Shown piece by piece: positions 40,847-58,165 of a stretch of DNA of 64,000 nt. The position numbers and the translations under genes are program-made. The stretch lies in the IMG/VR virus record IMGVR_UViG_3300024350_000252, positions 174,048-238,047 of that record; one strand, written 5' to 3'. Below the pieces are notes generated by a model. That model was not told the origin of the DNA. It made no database searches and saw nothing but the letters and a program-made list of their open reading frames with translations. Numbering within the stretch: position 1 is the stretch's first letter; every line of letters starts with the position of its first letter.

Positions 40847-40873
40847 TAGGGCACTTCGGTGCCCTATCTTTTT
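40847..40873 (+). terminator. Rho-independent terminator with UUCG tetraloop
   Basis: TAGGGCAC-TTCG-GTGCCCTA-TCTTTTT. Confidence 0.9.
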
Positions 40874-44052: not shown

Positions 44053-44507
44053 TGAATTGGTACGATAAAATATCCAAAGATATTTCTAATATCCCAGATG
44101 CTGTAGCTTATTTTGAATCTGAGCTACAGCAAGCAAGGATAGAATGTAAGATCTTTGGAAACATCGAAAAGGCTTCGGCATCTATGCCTGGTATAGTAGA
44201 AAATCGCTTTGGTCAATTACAAGAGATCGAAGCGATTCTCGAATACCTTAATATAGAGTTACGTCGACTAAAAAGTCAACATTTTAGAAAATATCTTGAA
44301 AACTATCAACGTGCTTTGTCATCTAGAGACTGTGAAAAGTTTGTAGACGGCGAAGCAGACGTTGTAGATTTTGAAAAGATTATCAATGAATTTGCTCTAC
44401 TACGCAACAAATGGTTAGGTATTACCAAAGCACTTGATCAGAAACAATGGCAATTGACTAATATAGTCAAACTCAGAATTGCCGGCATGGAAGACGCCAC
44501 TCTGTAA
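44052..44507 (+). CDS. uvsY: Recombination mediator UvsY
   Basis: KYLENYQRALSSRDCEKFVDGE..KWLGITKALDQKQWQLTNIVKLRIAGMEDA; position after uvsX. Confidence 0.85.
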   Translation: MNWYDKISKDISNIPDAVAYFESELQQARIECKIFGNIEKASASMPGIVENRFGQLQEIEAILEYLNIELRRLKSQHFRKYLENYQRALSSRDCEKFVDGEADVVDFEKIINEFALLRNKWLGITKALDQKQWQLTNIVKLRIAGMEDATL

Positions 44508-44525
44508 TACCACAAAAACATAGCA

Positions 44526-44533
44526 TATAAATA
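44526..44533 (+). promoter_or_regulatory. T4-type late promoter (perfect consensus)
   Basis: TATAAATA-ttgct-ATG (44539). Confidence 0.85.
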
Positions 44534-44538
44534 TTGCT

Positions 44539-45297
44539 ATGAAAATAGTTTTAGTAACAGGTGGTTTTGATCCGATACATTCCGGACACATCTCATATCT
44601 CAAATCCGCAAAATCTCTAGGAGACAAACTGGTCGTTGGACTAAACAGCGACAGTTGGTTGGCCAGAAAGAAAGGCGCTGCGTTCATGCCCATAGAAGAA
44701 CGCAAAGTTATTCTTAAAGCTATCAAGCCTGTAGATTATGTTTTAGAATTTAATGATACTGATGGCACAGCATTAGATGCTATCCGAAAGACTAGGTTAA
44801 ATTTTCCCGGAGATAGTATAATATTCGCCAATGGCGGGGATAGAACCAAAGATAATATTCCAGAAATGACTACTGACGATTACGATACTACATTCGTTTT
44901 CGGAGTAGGCGGTGATGATAAGAAAAATTCCAGCAGCTGGATATTACAAGAGTGGAAAGCACCGAAGACCGAACGTCCATGGGGATATTATCGTGTGTTA
45001 CACGAAATTCCCGGAACAAAGGTAAAAGAACTTACAGTCAATCCTGGACAAAGTCTCAGTATGCAAAAACATCAGTCAAGGGCAGAATACTGGCACGTAG
45101 CATCGGGTTCGTGTGTGGTAAATGCCATCATGGCCAGCGGATATGTTTTACCTTCTAAAACTTTAGAACAACATGACGAATATAAAGTACCTCTAGGGGA
45201 ATGGCATCAATTGACAAATCCTTTTGATGAACCTTGTAAGATCGTAGAAATACAGTATGGCGAGCGATGTGTAGAAGAAGACATTGAAAGAAAATGA
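44539..45297 (+). CDS. Cytidylyltransferase-like domain fused to a mannose-6-phosphate-isomerase-type cupin
   Basis: TGGFDPIHSGH, GLNSD..RKKG, FANGGDR; ERPWGYY..KELTVNPGQSLSMQKH..RAEYWHV..IVEIQYG...EEDIER. Confidence 0.88.
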   Translation: MKIVLVTGGFDPIHSGHISYLKSAKSLGDKLVVGLNSDSWLARKKGAAFMPIEERKVILKAIKPVDYVLEFNDTDGTALDAIRKTRLNFPGDSIIFANGGDRTKDNIPEMTTDDYDTTFVFGVGGDDKKNSSSWILQEWKAPKTERPWGYYRVLHEIPGTKVKELTVNPGQSLSMQKHQSRAEYWHVASGSCVVNAIMASGYVLPSKTLEQHDEYKVPLGEWHQLTNPFDEPCKIVEIQYGERCVEEDIERK

Positions 45298-46094
45298 AAG
45301 ATTGGATTTTCTTAAGCAAAGATGGCCAAGATGAATATATCAATATGTTTGCCAAAGGATGTGGATCAGAATCCGTAAACACAGAAGACTTTGATTATGA
45401 TTCTAGCGATCTTCCTATAGTTCTAAGAGGCATTCTAAAACACAAGATAATGAAACGCTGTTGGGAAGATCGAAGAGACTTTTACTATGTAGATACCGGA
45501 TATTTTGGCAACGAACGCACTACAAATAATCCTAACGGTTGGAAATATTGGCACAGGATAGTTAAAAACAATCTTCAACATGGGGAAATAATATCAAGGC
45601 CAGATGATAGATTTCGCAGGTTCGGAAAAAAATTCCAACCGTGGAAAAAGACCGGTAAGAAAATACTAATAGCTAAACCAGATGTCAAACCTTGTAAATT
45701 TTACGGTGTAGATCTAGAACAATGGACTACTGATACTATAGCAGAGATCAAAAAACACACAGACAGGCCTGTAGAGGTTCGTGAAAGAGCACCCAAGCGT
45801 ATTGATAGAATAAAGACATCTACGTTACAACAAGCATTAGATGATGATGTATTTGCTCTAGTAACATTTAACAGTGTAGCTGCTGTAGAAAGCATATTTC
45901 ACGGAATACCTGCGTTTACTTTAGCTCCTGCTAATGCTGCTAGCCCTGTTAGTTTACAAGACATTAGCCAAATAGAAAAACCCTACTATCCAGACAGCGA
46001 TAAATTATATGCGTGGGCCTGTCATCTAGCTTATGGTCAGTTCCATGTGTCGGAATTAAAAAATGGTGCGGCTAGGGAGATGTTAAATGCCTGA
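45294..46094 (+). CDS. Capsule-synthesis (KpsS/KpsC-like) glycosyltransferase
   Basis: YYVDTGYF..IKKHTDRPVEVR..LVTFNSVAAVESIFHGIPAF..W..HLAYGQF. Confidence 0.6.
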   Translation: MKDWIFLSKDGQDEYINMFAKGCGSESVNTEDFDYDSSDLPIVLRGILKHKIMKRCWEDRRDFYYVDTGYFGNERTTNNPNGWKYWHRIVKNNLQHGEIISRPDDRFRRFGKKFQPWKKTGKKILIAKPDVKPCKFYGVDLEQWTTDTIAEIKKHTDRPVEVRERAPKRIDRIKTSTLQQALDDDVFALVTFNSVAAVESIFHGIPAFTLAPANAASPVSLQDISQIEKPYYPDSDKLYAWACHLAYGQFHVSELKNGAAREMLNA

Positions 46095-47532
46095 AATGAT
46101 CAAGGTATTTGTAGGTTTTGATTCTAGAGAAGAAATCGCCTACGAAGTCTGTAAACATTCAATTTTAAAACACAATAAGAACGTAAAAGTTTCTCCGTTG
46201 AAACAAGACCATCTAAGAAGATTGGGATTATATTGGAGACCAACTGATCCGTTATCAAGCACCGAATTTACCTTTACAAGATTCTTAGTACCGGCACTTT
46301 GTAACTATCAAGGCTGGGCAGTTTTTTGTGATTGCGATTTTATATGGACTGAAGACATTGCCAATTTACTAGCCAAGGCTGATCCTAAGTATGCTGTGAT
46401 GTGTGTACATCATGACTACACTGTAAAAAATACAGTCAAGATGGATGGAAAAGAACAGACTATCTATCCTAGGAAAAACTGGAGTTCGATGGTGTTATTC
46501 AACTGCGGACATCCATCTAATCGAACATTAACCGCAGATTTAGTTAATAAAGAAACGGGCAAGTATCTACATAGATTTGGTTGGTTAAAAGATGAAGAGA
46601 TTGGCGAAATATCTCATGAATGGAATTGGTTAGTTGGTGTATATTCTGAATCAACTGGCGGAAAACCTAGAGCTATACATTATACAGAAGGCGGCCCGTG
46701 GTTCGATAATTATAGAACTTGTGAATATGCTGATGTATGGAATAACTATCTTCTATCGTATTCGTTAGATATCATACAAAAGGATAAACAAGCAGACATT
46801 GATATTCCTATAACATGGGTCACAAGTCTTAGTAGAGAATATTGGAACATAATTGCCGAAGCCACATTGCCTACATGGAGTAATCTCCCTGGACAGGTAG
46901 TATTTGTTTGGGACGATAAACCAAAAGATCTAGGATTTGGTTACAATTTTATGTTCAGCAAAGACGTATGTCCGGATTCCGATCCTTGGATACGAGAAAA
47001 GATGGGTTCTTACAAGTCTGACAGATTTTGGAAAAAGAGCCGTGTACAAGTATGGGCAGCACGTAAATTTAAAGGTCTAGTAGTTTGGTTAGATGCCGAT
47101 ATATCTGTTAAGAACAATATTGATCTTGATACCGCTATTAAACTTTTACATCCCAGAGAAAAAGTATGTGGTATATTAGATTGTGGCGGCGAATGGGACG
47201 TTGACACTGGGCTCGTTACTTTTAATACTGACCACGTAGCTATACACGACTTTATCAGCAAGTATTCATTGATGTGGTACAATGGGCAGATATCTACACT
47301 TCCTCAACCTTATGACCATTATGCTATGAGTAAATTGAGAAATAGCATAGCAATGAAAACATACGTGTTACCTAAGGAACAATGGAGAGAAACCCCAACT
47401 GAAAACATAAACAGATCAGCTATGCGTAATAGCATTTTCGATTATCACTTCGAACATCACTTAGGTATAGAAAATAAAGATGAAGTTCGTAGTAAATTTA
47501 GACAAATACCTTTAGTGAGTAGCAAACAATGA
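46087..47532 (+). CDS. Two-domain glycosyltransferase fusion (GT8-like plus GT-A)
   Basis: VFVGFDSRE..STEFTFTRFLVP..FCDCDF..YPRKNWSS..WNWLVG..IHYTEGGPW; second domain FWKK..VVWLDAD..GLVTFN. Confidence 0.8.
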   Translation: MPEMIKVFVGFDSREEIAYEVCKHSILKHNKNVKVSPLKQDHLRRLGLYWRPTDPLSSTEFTFTRFLVPALCNYQGWAVFCDCDFIWTEDIANLLAKADPKYAVMCVHHDYTVKNTVKMDGKEQTIYPRKNWSSMVLFNCGHPSNRTLTADLVNKETGKYLHRFGWLKDEEIGEISHEWNWLVGVYSESTGGKPRAIHYTEGGPWFDNYRTCEYADVWNNYLLSYSLDIIQKDKQADIDIPITWVTSLSREYWNIIAEATLPTWSNLPGQVVFVWDDKPKDLGFGYNFMFSKDVCPDSDPWIREKMGSYKSDRFWKKSRVQVWAARKFKGLVVWLDADISVKNNIDLDTAIKLLHPREKVCGILDCGGEWDVDTGLVTFNTDHVAIHDFISKYSLMWYNGQISTLPQPYDHYAMSKLRNSIAMKTYVLPKEQWRETPTENINRSAMRNSIFDYHFEHHLGIENKDEVRSKFRQIPLVSSKQ

Positions 47533-48446
47533 AAGTAGTTTGTTATATCTCAGCAATCCCGCCTAACAATAAAAATCAAGAAAAGAAAGATCTACATGTT
47601 CTTTTTGATCAAGGAGTTAAAACGATCGGTGACGAATCATTTTTGATGCATGGCACACAGATAATGGACTGTGATGTAGCATTACTACAAGGATGGGTAC
47701 ATGAAGGTTCTAAAAATGCTCCACACTTAAGATTGCGACAGGGAGTGATAGATCATCAACGCAATACAGGAAAGCATGTATTAATAGCTGATAGCAATCT
47801 TTTCCTTTATACCGACAAAGACAATCCTTTACATTATCTCAGATACAGTTTCGATGGCGTTTTTCCTACAACAGGAATTTATTTTGATAGAACGGTAGAT
47901 CCTTCAAGATGGCAACAGATTAAAAGAGATCACAAAATAGATATCAAAGACTGGAAAACAGATGGTGAATATATTCTTATTTGTACTCAAAGAAATGGCG
48001 GATGGAGCATGGGGTCTTTTGCTGTAACCAGCTGGTTAGATATGATAATCAGAGAAATACGACGGTATACTGATAGACCTATAGTAGTAAGAGGACATCC
48101 TGGAGACAGAAACACTGCGATATATCTAAAAGATTATGATCCAAGGTATACTTTAAGTAAAAATCCTAGTATACTAGATGATTTTAAAAATGCTAAAGCA
48201 GTTATCACTTATAATAGCAGTCCAGGCGTGGCTGCTGCTATAGAAGGTATTCCAGTTTTTGTAACAGACGATATGGCACAGAATAGTCAAGCATATGCTG
48301 TAGCAAATACTAACCTTTCGATGATAGAAAATCCCATCATGACTAATAATCGACAAGCATGGATCGAAAAAATCTGTATGAGTCACTGGAATTTTGAAGA
48401 ACTTAGGTCAGGTAAGGCCTGGGCACATTTTAAACAGTATGTCTGA
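47529..48446 (+). CDS. Capsule-synthesis (KpsS/KpsC-like) glycosyltransferase, paralogue
   Basis: IRRYTDRPIVVRGHPGD..VITYNSSPGVAAAIEGIPVF..HWNFEELRSG. Confidence 0.6.
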   Translation: MKVVCYISAIPPNNKNQEKKDLHVLFDQGVKTIGDESFLMHGTQIMDCDVALLQGWVHEGSKNAPHLRLRQGVIDHQRNTGKHVLIADSNLFLYTDKDNPLHYLRYSFDGVFPTTGIYFDRTVDPSRWQQIKRDHKIDIKDWKTDGEYILICTQRNGGWSMGSFAVTSWLDMIIREIRRYTDRPIVVRGHPGDRNTAIYLKDYDPRYTLSKNPSILDDFKNAKAVITYNSSPGVAAAIEGIPVFVTDDMAQNSQAYAVANTNLSMIENPIMTNNRQAWIEKICMSHWNFEELRSGKAWAHFKQYV

Positions 48447-49107
48447 CGCTATAACAAAATTAAATTTAGAATTTAGAGAAAGTAAAGCCCACGGCGGCAG
48501 TTGGCTTTGGCCTAACGACGACACGGTAGCTTGGTCATACCTTAATAAAGCAGCACATAGACATTTGCCCCACAAGATTTCTCAATTTTGTGATAGAAAA
48601 TCATTGGTTATACAAGCAGGTGGTAACGCAGGTCTATATCCTAAACAATATGCTTCCTTATTCCAACAGGTAATAACTATAGAACCAGATTATAGAAACT
48701 TTTTTTGTCTTTGTTACAATGTTCCTGATGCTAATGTATTCAAATTCCAAGCATGTCTTGGTGATAGCAACAAGATGTTAGGATTAGATTACAATCCTCG
48801 ATGGAATAATGAAAACCGAGGAGCGATGAAAGTATCTAGTTCTGGTATCATTCCACAAATAACCATCGACAGTTTCAATCTAGCACCGGATCTAATACAT
48901 CTTGACATAGAAGGTTACGAAGGATTTGCTCTCAACGGTGCTATTGATACCATTACCAAACACAAACCATTGATAGTGCTAGAAACGAATGGTTCAGGGG
49001 ATGAATATGGATGGCCGCAGAACAAAATTGATGAATTATTGTTTTCTTTAGGTTATAAAATTCTAGAAAACTGGGGTCATGATACGGTGTACAAAAATGA
49101 AACGTGA
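48439..49107 (+). CDS. FkbM-family SAM-dependent methyltransferase
   Basis: VIQAGGNAGLYP..IEPD..ITIDSF..PDLIHLDIEGYE..ALNGA..TI..HKPLIVLE; start moved to ATG at 48439. Confidence 0.88.
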   Translation: MSDAITKLNLEFRESKAHGGSWLWPNDDTVAWSYLNKAAHRHLPHKISQFCDRKSLVIQAGGNAGLYPKQYASLFQQVITIEPDYRNFFCLCYNVPDANVFKFQACLGDSNKMLGLDYNPRWNNENRGAMKVSSSGIIPQITIDSFNLAPDLIHLDIEGYEGFALNGAIDTITKHKPLIVLETNGSGDEYGWPQNKIDELLFSLGYKILENWGHDTVYKNET

Positions 49108-49768
49108 TATTTTATGGGTTACTGGATTTAGCGAGAGTTATTATAATGCTGTAGGAAAAATTACCTTAGGCACATGGAATTTTCTCACTAACGATCACAT
49201 ATTTTTTAGCGAAAGTCGTATTTCTCATAAAGGTACGATTTATATCGGCGAAGAAATGAAAAATTATCATCCAGATTTACAAAATAAGATTTTTAATGAA
49301 AGTAAAAAGACATATAAATTTTTCAAGAAAGCATTTTGTATCTGGTATGCTCTAAAAAACTATCAAGACAAGTATAAGTCTATTATTTGGTTAGACACAG
49401 ATGTGTTAGTTAAAAAACCTTTTGATGTAAATGAATTTTTACCAAACCAAGATCAGATTTTTTCTACTATCATCCACGGACAACATGGCTGCGACTCGGG
49501 TTTCGTAGCATTTAACACTGATTATCCAGATTTTGACAAATTTGTCGACGAATATATCGATTACTATTTGTCAGGTAGGATATATCAGATGCACAATCCA
49601 TGGGATGCTTATATCCTCGAAGACTTTTCTAAAAGGATGCCAGTAAAAAATCTATTTTCTGGTAAGCCCTCTAAAGAAGATTGCGGATTCCAAAACACTT
49701 TGTTAGATCCTTATCTCGATCATTACTGGGGAAAGAAAGGAAAAATAGAATTGGAGTCTAAATCATGA
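49097..49768 (+). CDS. GT-A fold nucleotide-diphospho-sugar transferase
   Basis: FFKKAF..IIWLDTDV..CDSGFVAFN..WDAY; start moved to ATG at 49097. Confidence 0.7.
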   Translation: MKRDILWVTGFSESYYNAVGKITLGTWNFLTNDHIFFSESRISHKGTIYIGEEMKNYHPDLQNKIFNESKKTYKFFKKAFCIWYALKNYQDKYKSIIWLDTDVLVKKPFDVNEFLPNQDQIFSTIIHGQHGCDSGFVAFNTDYPDFDKFVDEYIDYYLSGRIYQMHNPWDAYILEDFSKRMPVKNLFSGKPSKEDCGFQNTLLDPYLDHYWGKKGKIELESKS

Positions 49769-50499
49769 AATATACCGTAAAATGGTCGGGATTAGCTGAT
49801 TCGAAATACTATGAATATATTGCTAAATTTTGTTTACCTTCATGGACAATGTTGCCAGGAGAAAAATTCGTCATTCATGATGGCAACTTGATCAACATAC
49901 CAGGTATCAATGTAGTACCATGGGAAGGAATACCCAACGAACAGTCAAAATTTATCGCCAATCAGCCTAAGAAGAAACCTTGGAACTTCTGGCGGAAGAT
50001 GCAGAGCCAAGTACACGCAGTAAGAACACAAAAAGATTGCGATTTTTTGGTTTTGTTAGACACCGACATCGAAGTTTTTGATTTTAATGCGAAATTATTT
50101 TCACAAGAGTTAGAAAATTTACTAACATCGGGGCTAGTATGGGCTACTGGTCAATCTCAATTGAGAAAATTAGATGCCGGTTTCATCATCATTAACATGA
50201 AACACCCATCCAGAGAACAGTTGATAAACGATTATGAAGATATTTGGGAATCTGGTAAAATTTATACACTAGAAAAAGGCTACGATGGAGATGCTGTCGA
50301 AAGTCTTTTTGAAAAATATCCTTCATACAGATTAAAAAACAGAGATTACGGGTCTGGCCTACATGTTTACGATCTAGGAGTGATACATTGGGGTAGCAAA
50401 CTACCAAAAGAACTAAGAGCTGCGTGGCAAGGAGATGCTAAAAGTCTTCTTGATAAAAGATTATCAGAGATAGTGATCAAAGAATATAAAAATCGCTAA
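49765..50499 (+). CDS. GT-A fold nucleotide-diphospho-sugar transferase
   Basis: FWRK..VLLDTDI..DAGFIIIN..YDGD. Confidence 0.65.
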   Translation: MKYTVKWSGLADSKYYEYIAKFCLPSWTMLPGEKFVIHDGNLINIPGINVVPWEGIPNEQSKFIANQPKKKPWNFWRKMQSQVHAVRTQKDCDFLVLLDTDIEVFDFNAKLFSQELENLLTSGLVWATGQSQLRKLDAGFIIINMKHPSREQLINDYEDIWESGKIYTLEKGYDGDAVESLFEKYPSYRLKNRDYGSGLHVYDLGVIHWGSKLPKELRAAWQGDAKSLLDKRLSEIVIKEYKNR

Positions 50500-51305
50500 G
50501 ACACCCAATAGCTTTCTTGTCTGTTTACCCTAAGATCAGTGATTTTGCTTTTTCCTAAGTCTTTTCTAGCACCTTTTAAATGATCTAGGTAAGCTCCCCA
50601 AGCAGAATTTATCAAAGGATGACCTTCACCTTTGATCAAACCTCTACTCCAATCGTGTTGTTTGAGAAAAGGCATCCTTAACCTAACGTCATCAAAAACA
50701 AAACTGTCATGCCACTCTGTAAGACGGAAAATTCCGGTCTCTGCGTGGTCATACATCCTTTGAAATTCTCTTAAAAAATCTAATGTTTGGAGATTTTTAA
50801 GATTCATAGAATACAACCCACATTCGGACCATTTATTTTCTCTACCTAAAAAACATATGTCTTGTTCTTTTGGTATCAATTGTTCAATAGCTACTAAATT
50901 TATGGGACTATGACATATTGTGTCAGCATCCATCCATAATAAAATGTCACTTTCACAGTTTTTAGCACAATGAAATATAGCATAGACCTTATGACTGAAT
51001 CTTACAGCATCCCATCTAAAGCCTATACCGGGCTGTTTACCACCTTTACCGATCGGACCTGTAGCAAGGTTTCCTGTAGCTCGTGGATCATCTTTCCATT
51101 TTTGTTTGAAGGAAACTAATTCAGGACTGCTAGAGTGTAAATCACGTACTACAAGGTTTTTTGCCTGTTCAACTACTTGGCAGTTTTCACTATATGCGTA
51201 CAGCGTAACTTCTTCGGGCCAATTTTTTATAAAACTATTGATCATGTTTCGGCCATATTTTTCATAGCCGGATTGATTGAATGTAGTAACCACGGAAATT
51301 TTCAT
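50496..51305 (-). CDS. GT-A fold nucleotide-diphospho-sugar transferase
   Basis: VVTTFN..WDAVRFSHKV..LWMDADT..ECGLY..EWHDSFVFD..DHLKG; stop codon overlaps the stop of the convergent gene. Confidence 0.8.
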   Translation of the reverse strand: MKISVVTTFNQSGYEKYGRNMINSFIKNWPEEVTLYAYSENCQVVEQAKNLVVRDLHSSSPELVSFKQKWKDDPRATGNLATGPIGKGGKQPGIGFRWDAVRFSHKVYAIFHCAKNCESDILLWMDADTICHSPINLVAIEQLIPKEQDICFLGRENKWSECGLYSMNLKNLQTLDFLREFQRMYDHAETGIFRLTEWHDSFVFDDVRLRMPFLKQHDWSRGLIKGEGHPLINSAWGAYLDHLKGARKDLGKSKITDLRVNRQESYWVS

Positions 51306-51310
51306 ATTGA

Positions 51311-51318
51311 TATTTATA
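51311..51318 (-). promoter_or_regulatory. T4-type late promoter (perfect consensus)
   Basis: Minus strand TATAAATA-tcaat-ATG (51305). Confidence 0.85.
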
Positions 51319-51378: not shown

Positions 51379-52566
51379 ATGATCTCAACACAACCTATCG
51401 ATAAAATCTTTGAGGACTTTGCCAACAGTGTGGTGTTCGGAAACATCCGTGTGGACACCGCAGATGAAAGTCCTGTTTATAGTTTTCATACGGTTGTCAC
51501 ACAAAATACCCCATTAACTAAGAAACAGAGTCTCTATGTTTTGAGGTTATTGAGGAAGTATCAGACACCCTACGAACAATACAGTAAAAAATCTATCACA
51601 CATGCTTTGGCCAATCCTACATGGACACATCCATTTAGAGAATTAGATCCTAGCAAGAAAATCTATGTGGAAGAAATTGGAAAAATCACCTGGATTTTTG
51701 CTAAATTTCCATATGCCCTTAAAGAAGAATTTGCCAAGGAATTCAAGGTGTATGGAAAGATGATGTGGGATCCTGAGACCAAATCACAGAGAGCAAGATT
51801 GTATGACATCAATGTCGTACATCTTCATAGTTTTGGTCAAAAACATGGTTTTGAATTCGATGAAAAATTCCAAAATCTTGTAGAATCGGTTGAAGAAATA
51901 TGGCAACGTGAAAATGAAATCACACGCTCATGTATAGTCGAAAGTGACCATGTCAAGCTGATTAATGCTACAGAATCAGCTCAGGAATATTTTGACAAGA
52001 ATAAGAAAAACAGCTTAAAATCTGACCTATTTTTAGCCAGAATGTTAGGTCACAAATTTATCACTGATAAAACACAAAATAGAATAGAAACACTGTGCTC
52101 AAAGAAAAAATCTAAATTTTGGTTTCGAGATATCAATGTTCTCATGTCAGTGGTTAAAGACCTAGACCATCACCCTGTTTTGATATTTTTAGATAGAACC
52201 ACCGATGTAGTTGACTATGCTAAAAAGTTTGTAGAAGCAGGAATAAATGCCGGGATACCAAATGAATATTTCCGAATTCTTTTTAGATTCAAGAACGATG
52301 AAGAACAGGGTCAACGGTTTAACGAATGGATCAAAGAAAACAATCTCGGCGGTGAAGTCGAAACTGGCAAGATATTCATTTGCCAACACAAACCACCAAA
52401 ATGGATGATTAAGTCTAATTTACAGCCATCTTTACTGATAAGTAATACACTCAATCCGCATACAAATACATCAACCATTTCAATGATCAACCAGCACCAC
52501 ACTGTGTTTTACGTTGGTAACATCAGACCCACTGTGTCGAAGGAGACTGAAGTTGTCCATTTGTAA
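51379..52566 (+). CDS. Hypothetical protein (395 aa)
   Basis: Long clean ORF coupled to uvsW; no recognisable motif. Confidence 0.75.
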   Translation: MISTQPIDKIFEDFANSVVFGNIRVDTADESPVYSFHTVVTQNTPLTKKQSLYVLRLLRKYQTPYEQYSKKSITHALANPTWTHPFRELDPSKKIYVEEIGKITWIFAKFPYALKEEFAKEFKVYGKMMWDPETKSQRARLYDINVVHLHSFGQKHGFEFDEKFQNLVESVEEIWQRENEITRSCIVESDHVKLINATESAQEYFDKNKKNSLKSDLFLARMLGHKFITDKTQNRIETLCSKKKSKFWFRDINVLMSVVKDLDHHPVLIFLDRTTDVVDYAKKFVEAGINAGIPNEYFRILFRFKNDEEQGQRFNEWIKENNLGGEVETGKIFICQHKPPKWMIKSNLQPSLLISNTLNPHTNTSTISMINQHHTVFYVGNIRPTVSKETEVVHL

Positions 52567-57331: not shown

Positions 57332-57361
57332 CGATAAATATGTTTCATACTGGGACTAATC

Positions 57362-58165
57362 ATGCAACTAAATCCGTGTTATTTATATCCAAATAAGATA
57401 GACGTTTACACAAATCTCGAGTCCTGGACTGACAGGAGGCAACGTAAAGTGTATCAAAGAACATTCAAAACTTACCGCGGTTGTGATAATAGATTAGACC
57501 TTCAGGTTAGAAACGGTGATGAAAAACCTAGAAACATTTCAGGGTACACCGCCGTCTTCAATATAGTAGTTATCGACAGTAACGAATTGATTTTACAAAA
57601 AGACTGTGAAATATTAGACGCTACTACAGGTAAGATTTATGTTCGTATCACTGAAACAGAAATGCTAACTCTGACGCAGGGTTCATATCTATTTTCTGTA
57701 TATCTACAAGATGCCAACGGTGTTAAGACTCCTTTATACGGTGATAGCCAATATGGTGCTATAGGTAGATTAGAAGTAGTAGCAGACATGGTAGGTGGTC
57801 CTGTTGCTAGCCAAACTATCAACACTTTCAGTTATCTAGGTCCCGACATACACGGCGATCCTACAGATGTTTACTTCAGCGAAATAGTAGATGCCAAACC
57901 GCAATTCAATAATAACTCCGGACTACACACTTTCGCATTTTATATGACTAACTATTCGGGTGTCGTAACTATACAGGGCACTTTAGAAAATTCTGATAAC
58001 ATATTCGATTGGTGTGACGTTGAAACTATCAACTTCAATGATAGCGGTATCGCTTATGCCAATATCACAGGTATATGGAGCCGTCTAAGAATCAAACATA
58101 TGCCTACACTAGATAGGTTCGGAAATCCTTTAGGGACTATTGACAAAGTATTGTACAGATATTAA
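57362..58165 (+). CDS. Virion protein with BppU-N-like Ig domain
   Basis: LDLQVRNGD.KP.NISGYTAVF..TGKIYVRIT..GSYLFSV pattern; GATAAATA at 57333-57340. Confidence 0.5.
   Translation: MQLNPCYLYPNKIDVYTNLESWTDRRQRKVYQRTFKTYRGCDNRLDLQVRNGDEKPRNISGYTAVFNIVVIDSNELILQKDCEILDATTGKIYVRITETEMLTLTQGSYLFSVYLQDANGVKTPLYGDSQYGAIGRLEVVADMVGGPVASQTINTFSYLGPDIHGDPTDVYFSEIVDAKPQFNNNSGLHTFAFYMTNYSGVVTIQGTLENSDNIFDWCDVETINFNDSGIAYANITGIWSRLRIKHMPTLDRFGNPLGTIDKVLYRY

What the first reader, a model, noticed from the sequence alone, without database searches (positions are those of the whole stretch)
44526..51318. Eight-gene glycosylation island between uvsY and uvsW, bracketed by two perfect convergent late promoters
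Seen: nucleotidyltransferase-cupin, two KpsS/C-like GTs, a GT8/GT-A fusion, an FkbM methyltransferase and three GT-A genes. The plus and minus units meet at overlapping stops (50496-99), and TATAAATA lies at both outer ends. Known: uvsY and uvsW are neighbours in T4; DNA-modifying GTs are expressed before replication. Inference: late timing points to a complex methylated glycan on the virion or on the host surface, not DNA glucosylation.
Basis: partly seen in the sequence, partly recalled or inferred. Interest (0 to 1): 0.6.

Follow-up and report, generated by a model that had tools for sequence, protein, structure and literature searches.

The report
Late-expressed sugar-chain island in river phage
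An uncultivated giant river phage carries, between two recombination genes, a swappable eight-gene kit for building a complex methylated sugar chain; the kit sits behind the promoter type that also precedes the virus's particle genes, but what the sugar chain is attached to is still unknown.

Summary
Eight ORFs (44539-51305) form a seven-gene plus-strand operon and one convergent minus-strand gene with overlapping stops. Exact TATAAATA boxes lie 5 nt before both outer ATGs.

They are a nucleotidyltransferase-cupin fusion, two WbbB/KpsC-like GT-B paralogues, a GT8-like/GT-A fusion, an FkbM methyltransferase and three more GT-A paralogues. The best fold match of the modelled GT-A paralogue (o6) is the chlorovirus capsid-glycosylating enzyme A64R.

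ATAAATA is the late-promoter core of this phage. It is depleted overall but 28-fold enriched upstream of genes, including baseplate, tail-fibre and tail-tube genes. It is conserved before the island operon in 59 of 77 relatives.

The island is an accessory insert. Most relatives have only one gene between uvsY and uvsW. Other islands swap in GT25, epimerases, and pyruvyl-, sulfo- and methyltransferases, and one relative has KdsA/KdsB nearby.

No island protein has a membrane segment, and no exporter, flippase or lipid-carrier initiating enzyme was recognised. No ThyA-type, TET/JBP, C5-methylase or TGT gene was found in six partial genomes.

I favour a cytoplasmic glycan line acting on virion proteins (0.4). 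Host LPS or lipid remodelling (0.27) and DNA glycosylation (0.12) remain open. LPS-like gene clusters in aquatic T4-like phages are already described, so this is a new variant of a known kind.

The parts
44526..44533 (+). T4-type late promoter box TATAAATA, 5 nt before the o1 ATG, which predicts a leaderless mRNA
   Evidence: Sequence. ATAAATA is 28-fold enriched upstream of ORFs and precedes virion genes. It is conserved before o1 homologues in 59 of 77 distinct upstream regions, against 0 of 120 for uvsY (examples).
44539..45297 (+). o1: cytidylyl/adenylyl-transferase-like domain (HxGH motif) fused to a type II phosphomannose-isomerase cupin. Predicted function is sugar-phosphate isomerisation and NDP-sugar activation.
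   Evidence: Pfam PF01467 at 1.4e-14, PF01050 at 4.1e-20, PF07883. NCBIfam rfaE_dom_II at 1e-20 and GMP_PMI at 4e-18, both below the equivalog cut-offs. phrog_7878. PDB cytidylyltransferases. Present in 37 of 39 related islands.
45294..46094 (+). o2: GT-B paralogue of o4. WbbB/KpsC-like by paralogy, but it lacks the His of the HP motif.
   Evidence: BLASTP of o2 against o4 gives 1.6e-12. Alignment A2. No Pfam family.
46087..47532 (+). o3: fusion of a GT8-like GT-A (about residues 1-235, DXD in FCDCDF) with an A64R-like GT-A domain (about residues 240-481)
   Evidence: phrog_28018 at 4.6e-58. Pfam GT8 at 18.7 bits, below the 24.3 cut-off. tblastn matches to phage genes annotated as glycosyltransferases. 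Atlas: 26 of 30 hits carry GT8. The C-terminal half is paralogous to o6, o7 and o8. The two halves are separate genes in relatives.
47529..48446 (+). o4: WbbB/KpsC-like GT-B, a putative CMP-ulosonic acid (Kdo) transferase
   Evidence: AF2 model with pLDDT 89.7. The listed Foldseek matches down to rank 23 are all beta-Kdo transferases. VIA-align Z is 14.0-11.5 for WbbB, KpsC and KrkA, against 10.4 or less for other GT-B proteins. VRxHPG and NSS motifs align to WbbB residues 255-311. More than 3166 clusters of homologues exist in metagenomes.
48439..49107 (+). o5: FkbM-family SAM methyltransferase. The longest ORF starts at TTG 48394; ATG 48439 is the more likely start.
   Evidence: Pfam PF05050 at 40.8 bits against a cut-off of 22.7. 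TIGR01444 at 48.8 bits against 37.7. phrog_8156. Gene call of 222 aa on an identical contig.
49097..49768 (+). o6: A64R-like GT-A glycosyltransferase. The longest ORF starts at 49079.
   Evidence: AF2 model with pLDDT 92.8. Foldseek top match is PBCV-1 A64R (2p6w) at 2.3e-7, followed by a chondroitin synthase complex and a GT6 enzyme, then GT8 glycogenins. DXD is invariant. A profile against PDB gives only 2p6w, at E 0.28.
49765..50499 (+). o7: A64R-like GT-A paralogue, last gene of the plus-strand operon
   Evidence: Paralogy with o3C (1e-12) and o6 (2e-11). Alignment A1.
50496..51305 (-). o8: A64R-like GT-A paralogue on the minus strand. Its stop overlaps the o7 stop. It is the most conserved GT-A of the island type.
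   Evidence: Paralogy. Weak Pfam GT2_3 hit. Homologues at 41-64% identity in all 39 complete related islands.
51311..51318 (-). T4-type late promoter box TATAAATA (minus strand), 5 nt before the o8 ATG
   Evidence: Sequence. In relatives the minus-strand unit starts with an extra 132-aa gene, which is preceded by ATAAATA in 23 of 27 distinct upstream regions.

Best explanation
The island is an accessory, horizontally exchangeable glycan-assembly line of an uncultivated riverine T4-superfamily jumbo phage.

Shown:
- There are eight genes in two convergent units, each behind this clade's late-promoter box.
- All products are soluble.
- The families are a sugar-phosphate isomerase/nucleotidyltransferase fusion, a GT8-like GT-A, four GT-A paralogues whose modelled member (o6) matches A64R best, two GT-B paralogues whose best structural relatives are the CMP-Kdo-dependent WbbB/KpsC enzymes, and an FkbM methyltransferase.

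Inferred mechanism:
- Late in infection, together with the structural proteins, the enzymes work in the cytoplasm.
- o1 activates a mannose- or heptose-type sugar.
- The WbbB/KpsC-like enzymes add Kdo-type ulosonic acid from CMP-Kdo supplied by the host. One relative carries its own KdsA and KdsB.
- The GT-A enzymes extend the chain and FkbM O-methylates it.
- The acceptor I consider most likely is one or more virion proteins (capsid, decoration or fibre proteins). This would parallel chloroviruses, mimiviruses and mycobacteriophages, and would give a strain-variable acidic, methylated glycan coat.

The acceptor is the inferred and least certain step.
For: - Gene families and folds.
- Late-promoter class: ATAAATA is depleted overall (13 against 23 expected). 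Thirty of 40 sites lie within 60 nt upstream of ORFs. These ORFs include baseplate wedge and hub, tape measure, tail fibres, tail tube, head-tail adaptor and virion proteins.
- Promoter conservation: 59 of 77 upstream regions of o1 homologues, against 0 of 120 (uvsY), 0 of 104 (uvsX) and 0 of 68 (gp32). For the minus-strand unit the figure is 23 of 27.
- Cytoplasmic, carrier-independent design: no hydrophobic segment in any island protein. The variable island genes of relatives that were scanned gave no exporter, flippase, polymerase or initiating phosphoglycosyltransferase family.
- Kdo link: KdsA and KdsB, plus SAM synthetase, lie 4-5 kb from uvsW in relative G005.
- Virion parallels: the best fold match of the modelled GT-A paralogue o6 is the capsid-glycosylating A64R. 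Caulobacter phage CcrPW has the same trio (o4-like, GT8-like, FkbM) directly after a tail protein gene and before the lysozyme gene. Pelagimyophages keep such glycosyltransferases inside the tail-fibre 'host recognition cluster' (PMC7029224). Giant viruses encode Kdo pathways, methyltransferases and GT clusters for virion glycans (PMC9614988).
- Against DNA as acceptor: no ThyA-family, TET/JBP, C5-MT or TGT gene in the partial genomes searched.
- Expression in nature is plausible: contigs from four riverine metatranscriptomes cover the island.
Against: - No acceptor has been identified and no glycoprotein signal can be read from sequence.
- All the enzyme families (GT8, GT25, RfaE-like, Kdo-transferase-like) are classic LPS-core and capsule families that act on lipid-linked acceptors at the inner membrane. 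They could use host MsbA/Lpt for export, so the lack of exporters does not exclude a host-surface target.
- Fold similarity to A64R is modest (TM about 0.6, 13% identity), and GT6, GT8 and chondroitin synthase structures score nearly as well.
- o4 and o2 are not sequence members of Capsule_synth, and the catalytic Asp could not be checked.
- Virion glycosylation in phages of Gram-negative bacteria has no established precedent that I know of.
- No terminator lies between uvsY and o1. In relative G005 o1 starts 8 nt after uvsY without its own promoter, so expression is not necessarily late only.
- The metatranscriptome evidence consists of assembled contigs, which cannot show strand, ends or level and may contain DNA.
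Confidence: 0.4

Rival explanations
1. Host envelope remodelling. The enzymes act at the cytoplasmic face of the inner membrane on lipid A-core, on undecaprenyl-linked O-antigen or capsule intermediates, or on a lyso-phosphatidylglycerol poly-Kdo linker. Host MsbA/Lpt or ABC transporters carry the product to the surface. This would change receptors, giving superinfection exclusion or less loss of progeny on cell debris.
For: - The families are those of LPS core and capsule synthesis: GT8-like, an RfaE-domain-II-like nucleotidyltransferase, WbbB/KpsC-like GT-B, and GT25, pyruvyl transferase and UDP-glucose dehydrogenase in relatives.
- LPS-core type synthesis needs no phage-encoded flippase.
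- This is the published interpretation for similar clusters in pelagimyophages and cyanomyophages (PMC7029224).
- Hypervariability resembles that of O-antigen and capsule loci.
Against: - Dedicated late promoters shared with virion genes fit poorly with exclusion functions, which in T4 are early (own knowledge).
- No membrane-anchoring segment is present in any island protein.
- No initiating transferase, acyltransferase or transporter family was found among the variable island genes of relatives that were scanned.
- A strictly lytic jumbo phage has little time for newly made LPS to replace the existing surface, although latent periods in slow-growing river bacteria may be long.
Confidence: 0.27
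2. DNA hypermodification. The glycosyltransferases decorate a modified base in phage DNA with an oligosaccharide before packaging, as an anti-restriction measure.
For: - Phage DNA glycans can contain heptose, Kdo, uronic acids and up to trisaccharides. Their gene clusters contain cytidylyltransferases and lie next to replication genes. About 65% of such GT contigs have no recognisable base-modifying neighbour (bioRxiv 10.1101/2023.12.21.572611).
- Group transfer onto DNA typically occurs late (PMC13326640).
- The island lies among the recombination genes gp32, uvsX, uvsY and uvsW.
- Presence, absence and hypervariability fit an arms race with restriction systems.
Against: - No ThyA-family enzyme (the known route to 5hmC, 5hmU and 5hoC nucleotides) was found in G000 or in five island-bearing relatives. 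These contigs are 42-79% complete and extend to different sides of the island.
- No TET/JBP was found (the control never rang, so this result is weak). No C5-methyltransferase and no TGT/DpdA were found. ThyX is present.
- Seven GT domains plus O-methylation here, and pyruvylation and sulfation in relatives, exceed any DNA glycan described.
- The proteins are near neutral in charge.
- The phage assembles fully from 18 riverine DNA libraries, which is weak evidence.
Confidence: 0.12
3. The two TATAAATA boxes are chance AT-rich matches, and the genes are expressed only by read-through from the uvsX/uvsY transcripts, with middle timing.
For: TATAAATA occurs no more often than chance in the window (3 against 6.15 expected). 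No terminator lies between uvsY and o1. One metatranscriptome contig spans the uvsY-o1 junction.
Against: - Genome-wide positional enrichment of ATAAATA, combined with its overall depletion.
- The site is conserved in 59 of 77 relatives at protein identities of 50-70%, but is never found before uvsY, uvsX or gp32.
- The minus-strand gene o8 cannot be reached by read-through from uvsY.
- In run X22 the contig that covers uvsY ends at 44498 at depth 19.9, while the island is covered at 2-6.
Confidence: 0.05

Closest known systems
LPS-like glycosyltransferase/AMG clusters of aquatic T4-like myophages (pelagimyophage 'host recognition cluster'; P-SSM2-type cyanophage LPS genes)
   Same: Hypervariable clusters of GT8, rfaE-like, UDP-glucose dehydrogenase and methyltransferase genes in T4-superfamily phages of aquatic bacteria, with no function demonstrated (PMC7029224). 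Pelagibacter phage Mosig carries o4-like and GT8-like homologues next to methyl- and sulfotransferases.
   Different: Here the cluster is a discrete insert between uvsY and uvsW, not part of the tail-fibre region. It is driven by its own conserved late promoters. It is built around 2-6 WbbB/KpsC-like paralogues and A64R-like GT-A enzymes. The phage belongs to a lineage whose UvsX is closest to Rak2/GAP32/CBB/Atu_ph07-type jumbo phages.
Chlorovirus PBCV-1 A064R and the virus-encoded capsid glycosylation machinery; Kdo and glycan clusters of giant viruses (CroV, Fadolivirus, Mimivirus)
   Same: Soluble virus-encoded GT-A enzymes plus methyltransferases build strain-variable methylated glycans on virion proteins in the cytoplasm. 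Multi-domain GT fusions occur. Kdo pathways are encoded by some of these viruses (PMC9614988). A64R domain 1 is the best structural match of o6.
   Different: Sequence identity is about 13% and the profile E-value is 0.28, so this is a fold-level resemblance only. The hosts are bacteria rather than algae or protists. No glycan structure or acceptor is known here.
Retaining beta-Kdo transferases WbbB (GT99) and KpsC/KpsS (GT107)
   Same: GT-B-type fold with the best Z-scores (14.0-13.0). The VRxHPG and NSS motifs align to the CMP-binding region of WbbB. Several paralogues per locus recall the dual KpsC domains with different linkage specificities. KdsA and KdsB lie nearby in a relative.
   Different: No significant sequence-family hit. 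The proteins are shorter. o2 lacks the His of the HP motif. The nucleophile Asp has not been verified. The natural acceptors of WbbB and KpsC are lipid-linked, whereas no membrane association is evident here.
Phage DNA-glycan biosynthetic gene clusters (5hmC/5hoC-dependent GTs; RB69/DLP3 arabinosylation)
   Same: GT clusters with a nucleotidyltransferase, located among DNA-metabolism genes. The sugars include heptose and Kdo, and they act late.
   Different: No base-hydroxylating enzyme was found. There are many more GT domains, plus O-methyl, pyruvyl and sulfo decoration. The GT-B enzymes resemble Kdo transferases rather than the T4 beta-GT/BshA type.
Mycobacteriophage virion glycosylation
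   Same: Phage-encoded glycosyltransferases thought to be expressed with the structural genes and to glycosylate capsid and tail proteins (own knowledge of Freeman et al. 2023; mentioned in PMC11256854).
   Different: Those phages carry one to a few GT genes inside the structural operon of siphoviruses of Actinobacteria. There is no Kdo-type enzyme and no comparable island.

Membership tests
T4-type late promoter (gp55 class) | TATAAATA box at about -10, no -35 element required | tested here: met
   Exact 8-mers at 44526-44533 (+) and 51311-51318 (-).
T4-type late promoter (gp55 class) | The motif precedes late (virion) genes throughout the genome | tested here: met
   Thirty of 40 ATAAATA sites lie within 60 nt upstream of ORFs, a 28-fold enrichment. 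The downstream genes include baseplate, hub, tape measure, tail fibre, tail tube, adaptor and virion proteins. The motif is depleted elsewhere.
T4-type late promoter (gp55 class) | Dependence on the phage sigma factor gp55, with gp33 and gp45, and measured late timing | not tested
   gp55 and gp33 homologues were not searched for. Timing cannot be measured with these tools, and the metatranscriptome data are contigs only.
GT99/GT107 retaining beta-Kdo transferases (WbbB, KpsC, KpsS) | Characteristic GT-B-derived fold | tested here: met
   o4 model: the listed Foldseek matches down to rank 23 are all WbbB, KpsC or KrkA. VIA-align Z is 14.0 (rmsd 4.2 over 249 residues), against 10.4 or less for other GT-B proteins. 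o2 is included only through its paralogy with o4.
GT99/GT107 retaining beta-Kdo transferases (WbbB, KpsC, KpsS) | HP motif and Ser-Ser motif of the CMP-binding site | tested here: inconclusive
   o4 and its orthologues have VRxHPG and NSS(P/V)G, which align to WbbB residues 255-311. o2-type paralogues have RAP/REK in place of HP.
GT99/GT107 retaining beta-Kdo transferases (WbbB, KpsC, KpsS) | Sequence-family membership (Pfam Capsule_synth PF05159 or a significant match to WbbB/KpsC) | tested here: not met
   No Pfam hit even at E 10, apart from a sub-threshold DUF6716 hit. The profile against PDB gives WbbB only at E 1.5.
GT99/GT107 retaining beta-Kdo transferases (WbbB, KpsC, KpsS) | Catalytic Asp nucleophile and use of CMP-beta-Kdo | not testable with these tools
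   No residue-level structural alignment was available. Indirect support comes from KdsA and KdsB near the island of relative G005.
GT8 (retaining GT-A; o3 N-terminal half) | Pfam PF01501 above the gathering score; DXD motif | tested here: inconclusive
   18.7 bits against a cut-off of 24.3. DXD is present (DCD). phrog_28018 at 4.6e-58. Atlas: 26 of 30 named hits carry GT8. In a relative the separate gene gets a weak GT8 hit.
A64R-like GT-A (o3 C-terminal half, o6, o7, o8) | GT-A Rossmann-like fold with DXD | tested here: met
   o6 model with pLDDT 92.8. 2p6w is the top hit at 2.3e-7 with TM 0.59-0.63. D100 and D102 are invariant in the 15-sequence alignment. The sequence-level link is not significant (E 0.28).
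FkbM methyltransferase (o5) | Pfam PF05050 and TIGR01444 above their cut-offs | tested here: met
   40.8 bits against 22.7, and 48.8 bits against 37.7.
Cytidylyltransferase-like nucleotidyltransferase plus type II PMI cupin (o1) | PF01467 with an HxGH motif; PF01050/PF07883 cupin | tested here: met
   All three are above their cut-offs. HSGH lies at residues 14-17. No equivalog (HldE, TagD, ManC) reaches its cut-off, so the substrate is open.
Phage DNA glycosyl-hypermodification cluster | An enzyme that creates a hydroxylated or otherwise reactive base (ThyA homologue, or C5-MT plus TET/JBP, or DpdA) | tested here: not met
   PF00303, PF12851, PF00145 and PF01702 are absent from G000 (67% complete) and from four to five island-bearing relatives of 42-79% completeness. 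The TET control did not ring, and the genomes are incomplete.
Cell-surface polysaccharide locus (O-antigen or capsule type) | Initiating phosphoglycosyltransferase, flippase/polymerase or ABC exporter; membrane proteins | tested here: not met
   No hydrophobic 19-residue window above 1.4 in any island protein. None of these families was found among the island genes here or among the variable island genes of relatives that were scanned.

The most novel reading that the evidence does not exclude
An abundant clade of freshwater jumbo phages coats its own particles with a strain-variable, bacterial-type acidic glycan that contains oligo-Kdo and is O-methylated, and in relatives also pyruvylated or sulfated. 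The glycan would be built in the cytoplasm by a new phage-specific branch of the WbbB/KpsC Kdo-transferase fold, and expressed from leaderless late mRNAs. This would be the first Kdo-glycosylated virus particle and a bacterial-phage counterpart of giant-virus glycan coats.
Probability: 0.25. Interest if true: 0.8.

Novelty: new variant of a known kind. Interest (0 to 1): 0.5.

Why it matters
Glycan gene clusters in aquatic T4-like phages are usually filed as 'LPS auxiliary metabolic genes' that alter the host surface, and this has never been tested. Three things make the question testable here.

- The clade is very abundant. More than 600 IMG/VR contigs encode close UvsY relatives, and the o4 family has more than 3000 protein clusters.
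- The island has a clear presence/absence polymorphism at a fixed site.
- It has conserved, dedicated late promoters, which argue for a role at the time of particle assembly.

If the acceptor is the virion, phage particles would carry strain-specific bacterial-type glycans. That would bear on adsorption, grazing, stickiness to particles and serology. If the acceptor is DNA or LPS, the island would extend those known systems to Kdo-rich, heavily decorated glycans. The WbbB/KpsC-like paralogues are also a large, unannotated enzyme family of possible use for Kdo glycoengineering.

Tried and rejected
- blastn of the 8 kb region against 50,697 phage records gave no match (one search failed on length).
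- Single-sequence phmmer of o3 and o4 against PDB gave nothing.
- Pfam and NCBIfam gave nothing significant for o2, o4, o6, o7 and o9. A permissive Pfam scan of ten KpsC-like paralogues gave only sub-threshold DUF6716 hits (one search failed on a coordinate slip).
- The sigma-70 promoter and terminator scan did not differ from shuffles, and showed no terminator at the uvsY-o1 junction or at the convergent junction.
- Searches for base-modification enzymes (ThyA family, TET/JBP, C5-MT, TGT) were negative. The TET control rang nowhere, so that result carries little weight.
- KdsA and KdsB are absent from this contig and from three of four relatives.
- Two loci from the look-up of encoding contigs (L016, L017) could not be searched as whole records.
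- Laying metatranscriptome contigs could not give transcript ends, strand or level.
- Literature searches found no report of leaderless T4-type late mRNAs, of KpsC-like enzymes in phages, or of glycosylation in Colossusvirus phages.

Full report
**What the window is.** The window is the last 64 kb of a 238,047-bp IMG/VR viral contig. The contig has 40% G+C and CheckV rates it 67% complete. Identical copies of the o4 protein occur on many metagenome contigs, the longest 354,650 bp. The source is riverine: 18 DNA libraries hold the island completely and 6 metatranscriptomes hold part of it. The phage belongs to the T4 superfamily, with gp32-like, UvsX, UvsY and UvsW genes. Its UvsX is closest, at 60-67% identity, to those of Rak2/GAP32/CBB/Atu_ph07-type jumbo phages. 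No cultured phage matches at the DNA level.

**Check of the observation.** The eight ORFs, their strands and their overlaps are as described. The o1-o7 genes overlap by 4-11 nt, which suggests translational coupling. The o7 and o8 stops overlap at 50496-50499. TATAAATA lies at 44526-44533 (+) and 51311-51318 (-), each 5 nt before the ATG. The more likely starts are 48439 for o5 and 49097 for o6. One more gene, o9 (51379-52566, no family), separates the island from uvsW.

**Are the promoters real?** Counting does not show it. TATAAATA occurs 3 times in the window against 6.15 expected, and ATAAATA 13 times against 23 expected.
- Position does show it. Of the 40 ATAAATA sites in the contig, 30 lie within 60 nt upstream of a predicted start. 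That makes it the most enriched upstream 7-mer, at 28-fold.
- The genes behind these sites include baseplate wedge and hub, tape measure, tail fibres, tail tube, head-tail adaptor and other virion proteins.
- The overall depletion, together with this placement, fits selection against stray late promoters.
- Comparison settles it for the island. Among relatives whose proteins are 50-75% identical, ATAAATA lies within 60 nt upstream of the o1 homologue in 59 of 77 distinct upstream regions. It is never found upstream of uvsY (0 of 120), uvsX (0 of 104) or gp32 (0 of 68).
- The minus-strand unit in relatives starts with an extra 132-aa gene. That gene is preceded by the box in 23 of 27 regions.
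- Two cautions apply. No terminator separates uvsY from o1. In one relative o1 follows uvsY directly, without its own box.

**What the genes are.**
- o1 joins a cytidylyl/adenylyl-transferase-like domain (HxGH motif; best models are RfaE domain II and TagD) to a type II phosphomannose-isomerase cupin. No equivalog cut-off is reached, so the sugar is open. A mannose- or heptose-type NDP-sugar is my inference.
- o2 and o4 are paralogues. The o4 model (pLDDT 89.7) matches the retaining beta-Kdo transferases WbbB, KpsC and KrkA in all the listed Foldseek matches down to rank 23. VIA-align gives Z 14.0-11.5 for these, against 10.4 or less for generic GT-B enzymes. A family profile aligns VRxHPG and NSS to the CMP-binding region of WbbB. 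There is no significant sequence-family membership, and o2 lacks the His of the HP motif. I therefore call these WbbB/KpsC-like by fold and motif, not members of GT99 or GT107.
- The N-terminal half of o3 is GT8-like.
- The C-terminal half of o3, together with o6, o7 and o8, forms a paralogous set with an invariant DXD. The o6 model (pLDDT 92.8) is a GT-A fold. Its best match is domain 1 of PBCV-1 A64R, the capsid-glycosylating enzyme (2.3e-7), followed by a chondroitin synthase complex, a GT6 enzyme and then GT8 glycogenins.
- o5 is an FkbM methyltransferase.
- None of the proteins has a membrane segment, and all are near neutral in charge.

**Is it an island?** Yes.
- Among 47 relatives (UvsY 83-89% identical) with a complete uvsY-uvsW interval, 33 have only 1.2-1.3 kb there, holding an o9-like gene. 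Six have 2 kb, and eight have 6.8-11 kb glycan islands.
- In 39 further islands of 7.3-13.4 kb, the constant parts are o1 (37 of 39), the GT8-like gene (39 of 39), 2-6 WbbB/KpsC-like paralogues and the o8-like gene (39 of 39). FkbM (8 of 39) and the o6/o7 type (1-3 of 39) are variable.
- Other islands carry GT25, GT2, GT17-like, NAD-dependent epimerase/dehydratases, UDP-glucose dehydrogenase, polysaccharide pyruvyl transferase, sulfotransferase and several SAM methyltransferases.
- One relative encodes KdsA, KdsB and SAM synthetase 4-5 kb beyond uvsW. This ties the WbbB/KpsC-like enzymes to Kdo supply.
- The island here has 36.9% G+C against 40.0% for the genome.
- The trio of o4-like, GT8-like and FkbM genes also occurs directly after a tail protein gene in Caulobacter phage CcrPW. 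In Pelagibacter phage Mosig, o4-like and GT8-like genes lie next to methyl- and sulfotransferases.

**What is the acceptor?** This is the open step, and three targets are possible.

*DNA.* Recent work shows phage DNA glycans with heptose, Kdo, uronic acids and up to three sugars. It also shows that such transfers occur late. Late timing alone therefore does not exclude DNA. However, no ThyA-family enzyme, TET/JBP, C5-methyltransferase or TGT was found in this contig or in four to five island-bearing relatives. Those contigs extend to different sides of the island: G000 has about 218 kb upstream of it and G004 about 112 kb downstream. ThyX is present. Seven GT domains with methyl, pyruvyl and sulfo decoration also go beyond any known DNA glycan. 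I give this option 0.12.

*Host envelope.* The enzyme families are those of LPS core and capsule synthesis, and core-type synthesis needs no phage-encoded exporter. This is also the published reading for pelagimyophage clusters. Against it stand the late promoters shared with virion genes and the lack of any membrane association. I give this option 0.27.

*Virion proteins.* Several points fit: co-expression with structural genes, a soluble carrier-independent design, the A64R match, the tail-module location in CcrPW, the tail-fibre-cluster location in pelagimyophages, and the giant-virus precedents for virus-encoded Kdo, methyl and pyruvyl glycans on particles. Nothing demonstrates it, and I know of no precedent in phages of Gram-negative bacteria. 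I give this option 0.40. The remaining probability goes to chance promoters (0.05) and to targets not considered.

**Expression in nature.** Contigs from four riverine metatranscriptomes lie over the island at 99% identity or more. In one run the contig covering uvsY ends at 44498 at depth 19.9, while the island is covered at 2-6. This uneven cover would be unexpected from contaminating DNA alone, though the tool warns that contig depth cannot rank genes. These are assembled contigs, so strand, transcript ends and levels are not shown.

**Novelty.** Hypervariable LPS-like glycosyltransferase clusters in aquatic T4-like phages are already described, with untested functions. New here are:
- the fixed insertion site between uvsY and uvsW, with a presence/absence polymorphism;
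- the conserved, dedicated late promoters;
- the multi-copy WbbB/KpsC-like family, with more than 3166 homologous clusters, all unannotated;
- the A64R-like GT-A paralogues.

I rate this a new variant of a known kind, with interest 0.5.

**Side observation.** The late-promoter core is followed by the start codon either 4-5 nt later (11 of 40 sites here; 52 of 158 in relatives have the ATG 4-6 nt later) or 15-30 nt later. Composition-matched control 7-mers give 2-24 such sites out of 265-449. With T4-type spacing, the first class would place the A of the ATG at +1, giving leaderless late mRNAs. Both island promoters belong to this class. I found no report of this.

Noticed in passing
Whole contig. 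Window examples: 27960, 33991, 39172, 44527, 61953 (+) and 51317 (-): The distance from the late-promoter core ATAAATA to the ORF start codon is bimodal. It is 4-5 nt in 11 of 40 sites here (52 of 158 in relatives have the ATG 4-6 nt later), or 15-30 nt with room for a Shine-Dalgarno sequence. Control 7-mers give 2-24 such sites out of 265-449. The short class predicts leaderless late mRNAs, which I could not find reported for T4-type phages.
   Followed up: partly
Window, both strands: ATAAATA is under-represented (13 sites against 23 +/- 5 in shuffles; all 100 shuffles have at least 13). All 13 sites were assigned a same-strand ORF start within 50 nt downstream. This suggests selection against stray late promoters.
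   Followed up: partly
Relative G005 (IMG/VR contig of L174): G005:C1:8902-12557, held in L179: Four to five kb downstream of uvsW this relative carries a Vut_1/YhhQ-like transporter, SAM synthetase, a KdsA-type Kdo-8-P synthase and a KdsB-type CMP-sugar synthetase in a row. The region beyond uvsW is thus a second variable, glycan-related region. L016 likewise has FkbM, cupin and methyltransferase genes after uvsW.
   Followed up: partly
Window 51379-52566 (+): o9 is a 395-aa protein with no Pfam, PHROG or NCBIfam hit. It overlaps the uvsW start and is kept between uvsY and uvsW in nearly all relatives, but at only 20-35% identity. It is the only gene in that interval in island-less relatives. 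It may be a fast-evolving partner of UvsW.
   Followed up: no
Window 40847-40866 (+): A strong intrinsic-terminator-like hairpin (8 bp stem, GC-rich, T tract) lies right after the 552-aa virion protein gene. It separates the late structural block from the gp32-uvsX-uvsY block.
   Followed up: no
Window 57334-57340 (+) and 57380-57386 (-); contig positions 138590 (+) and 138617 (-): Pairs of late-promoter boxes lie back to back on opposite strands within about 30-50 nt. They drive divergent genes, one of which is the baseplate hub with the tape-measure-like gene opposite.
   Followed up: no
Contig G000:C1:87779-88357 (L005): The phage encodes a flavin-dependent thymidylate synthase (ThyX, 8e-47). 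No ThyA-family protein was found.
   Followed up: partly
Six relatives with a 2.0 kb uvsY-uvsW interval (L019, L077, L078, L088, L089, L094): These relatives lack the island at this site but carry an o1 homologue (61-65% identity) elsewhere within 10 kb. The glycan genes can therefore sit at other positions in the genome.
   Followed up: no
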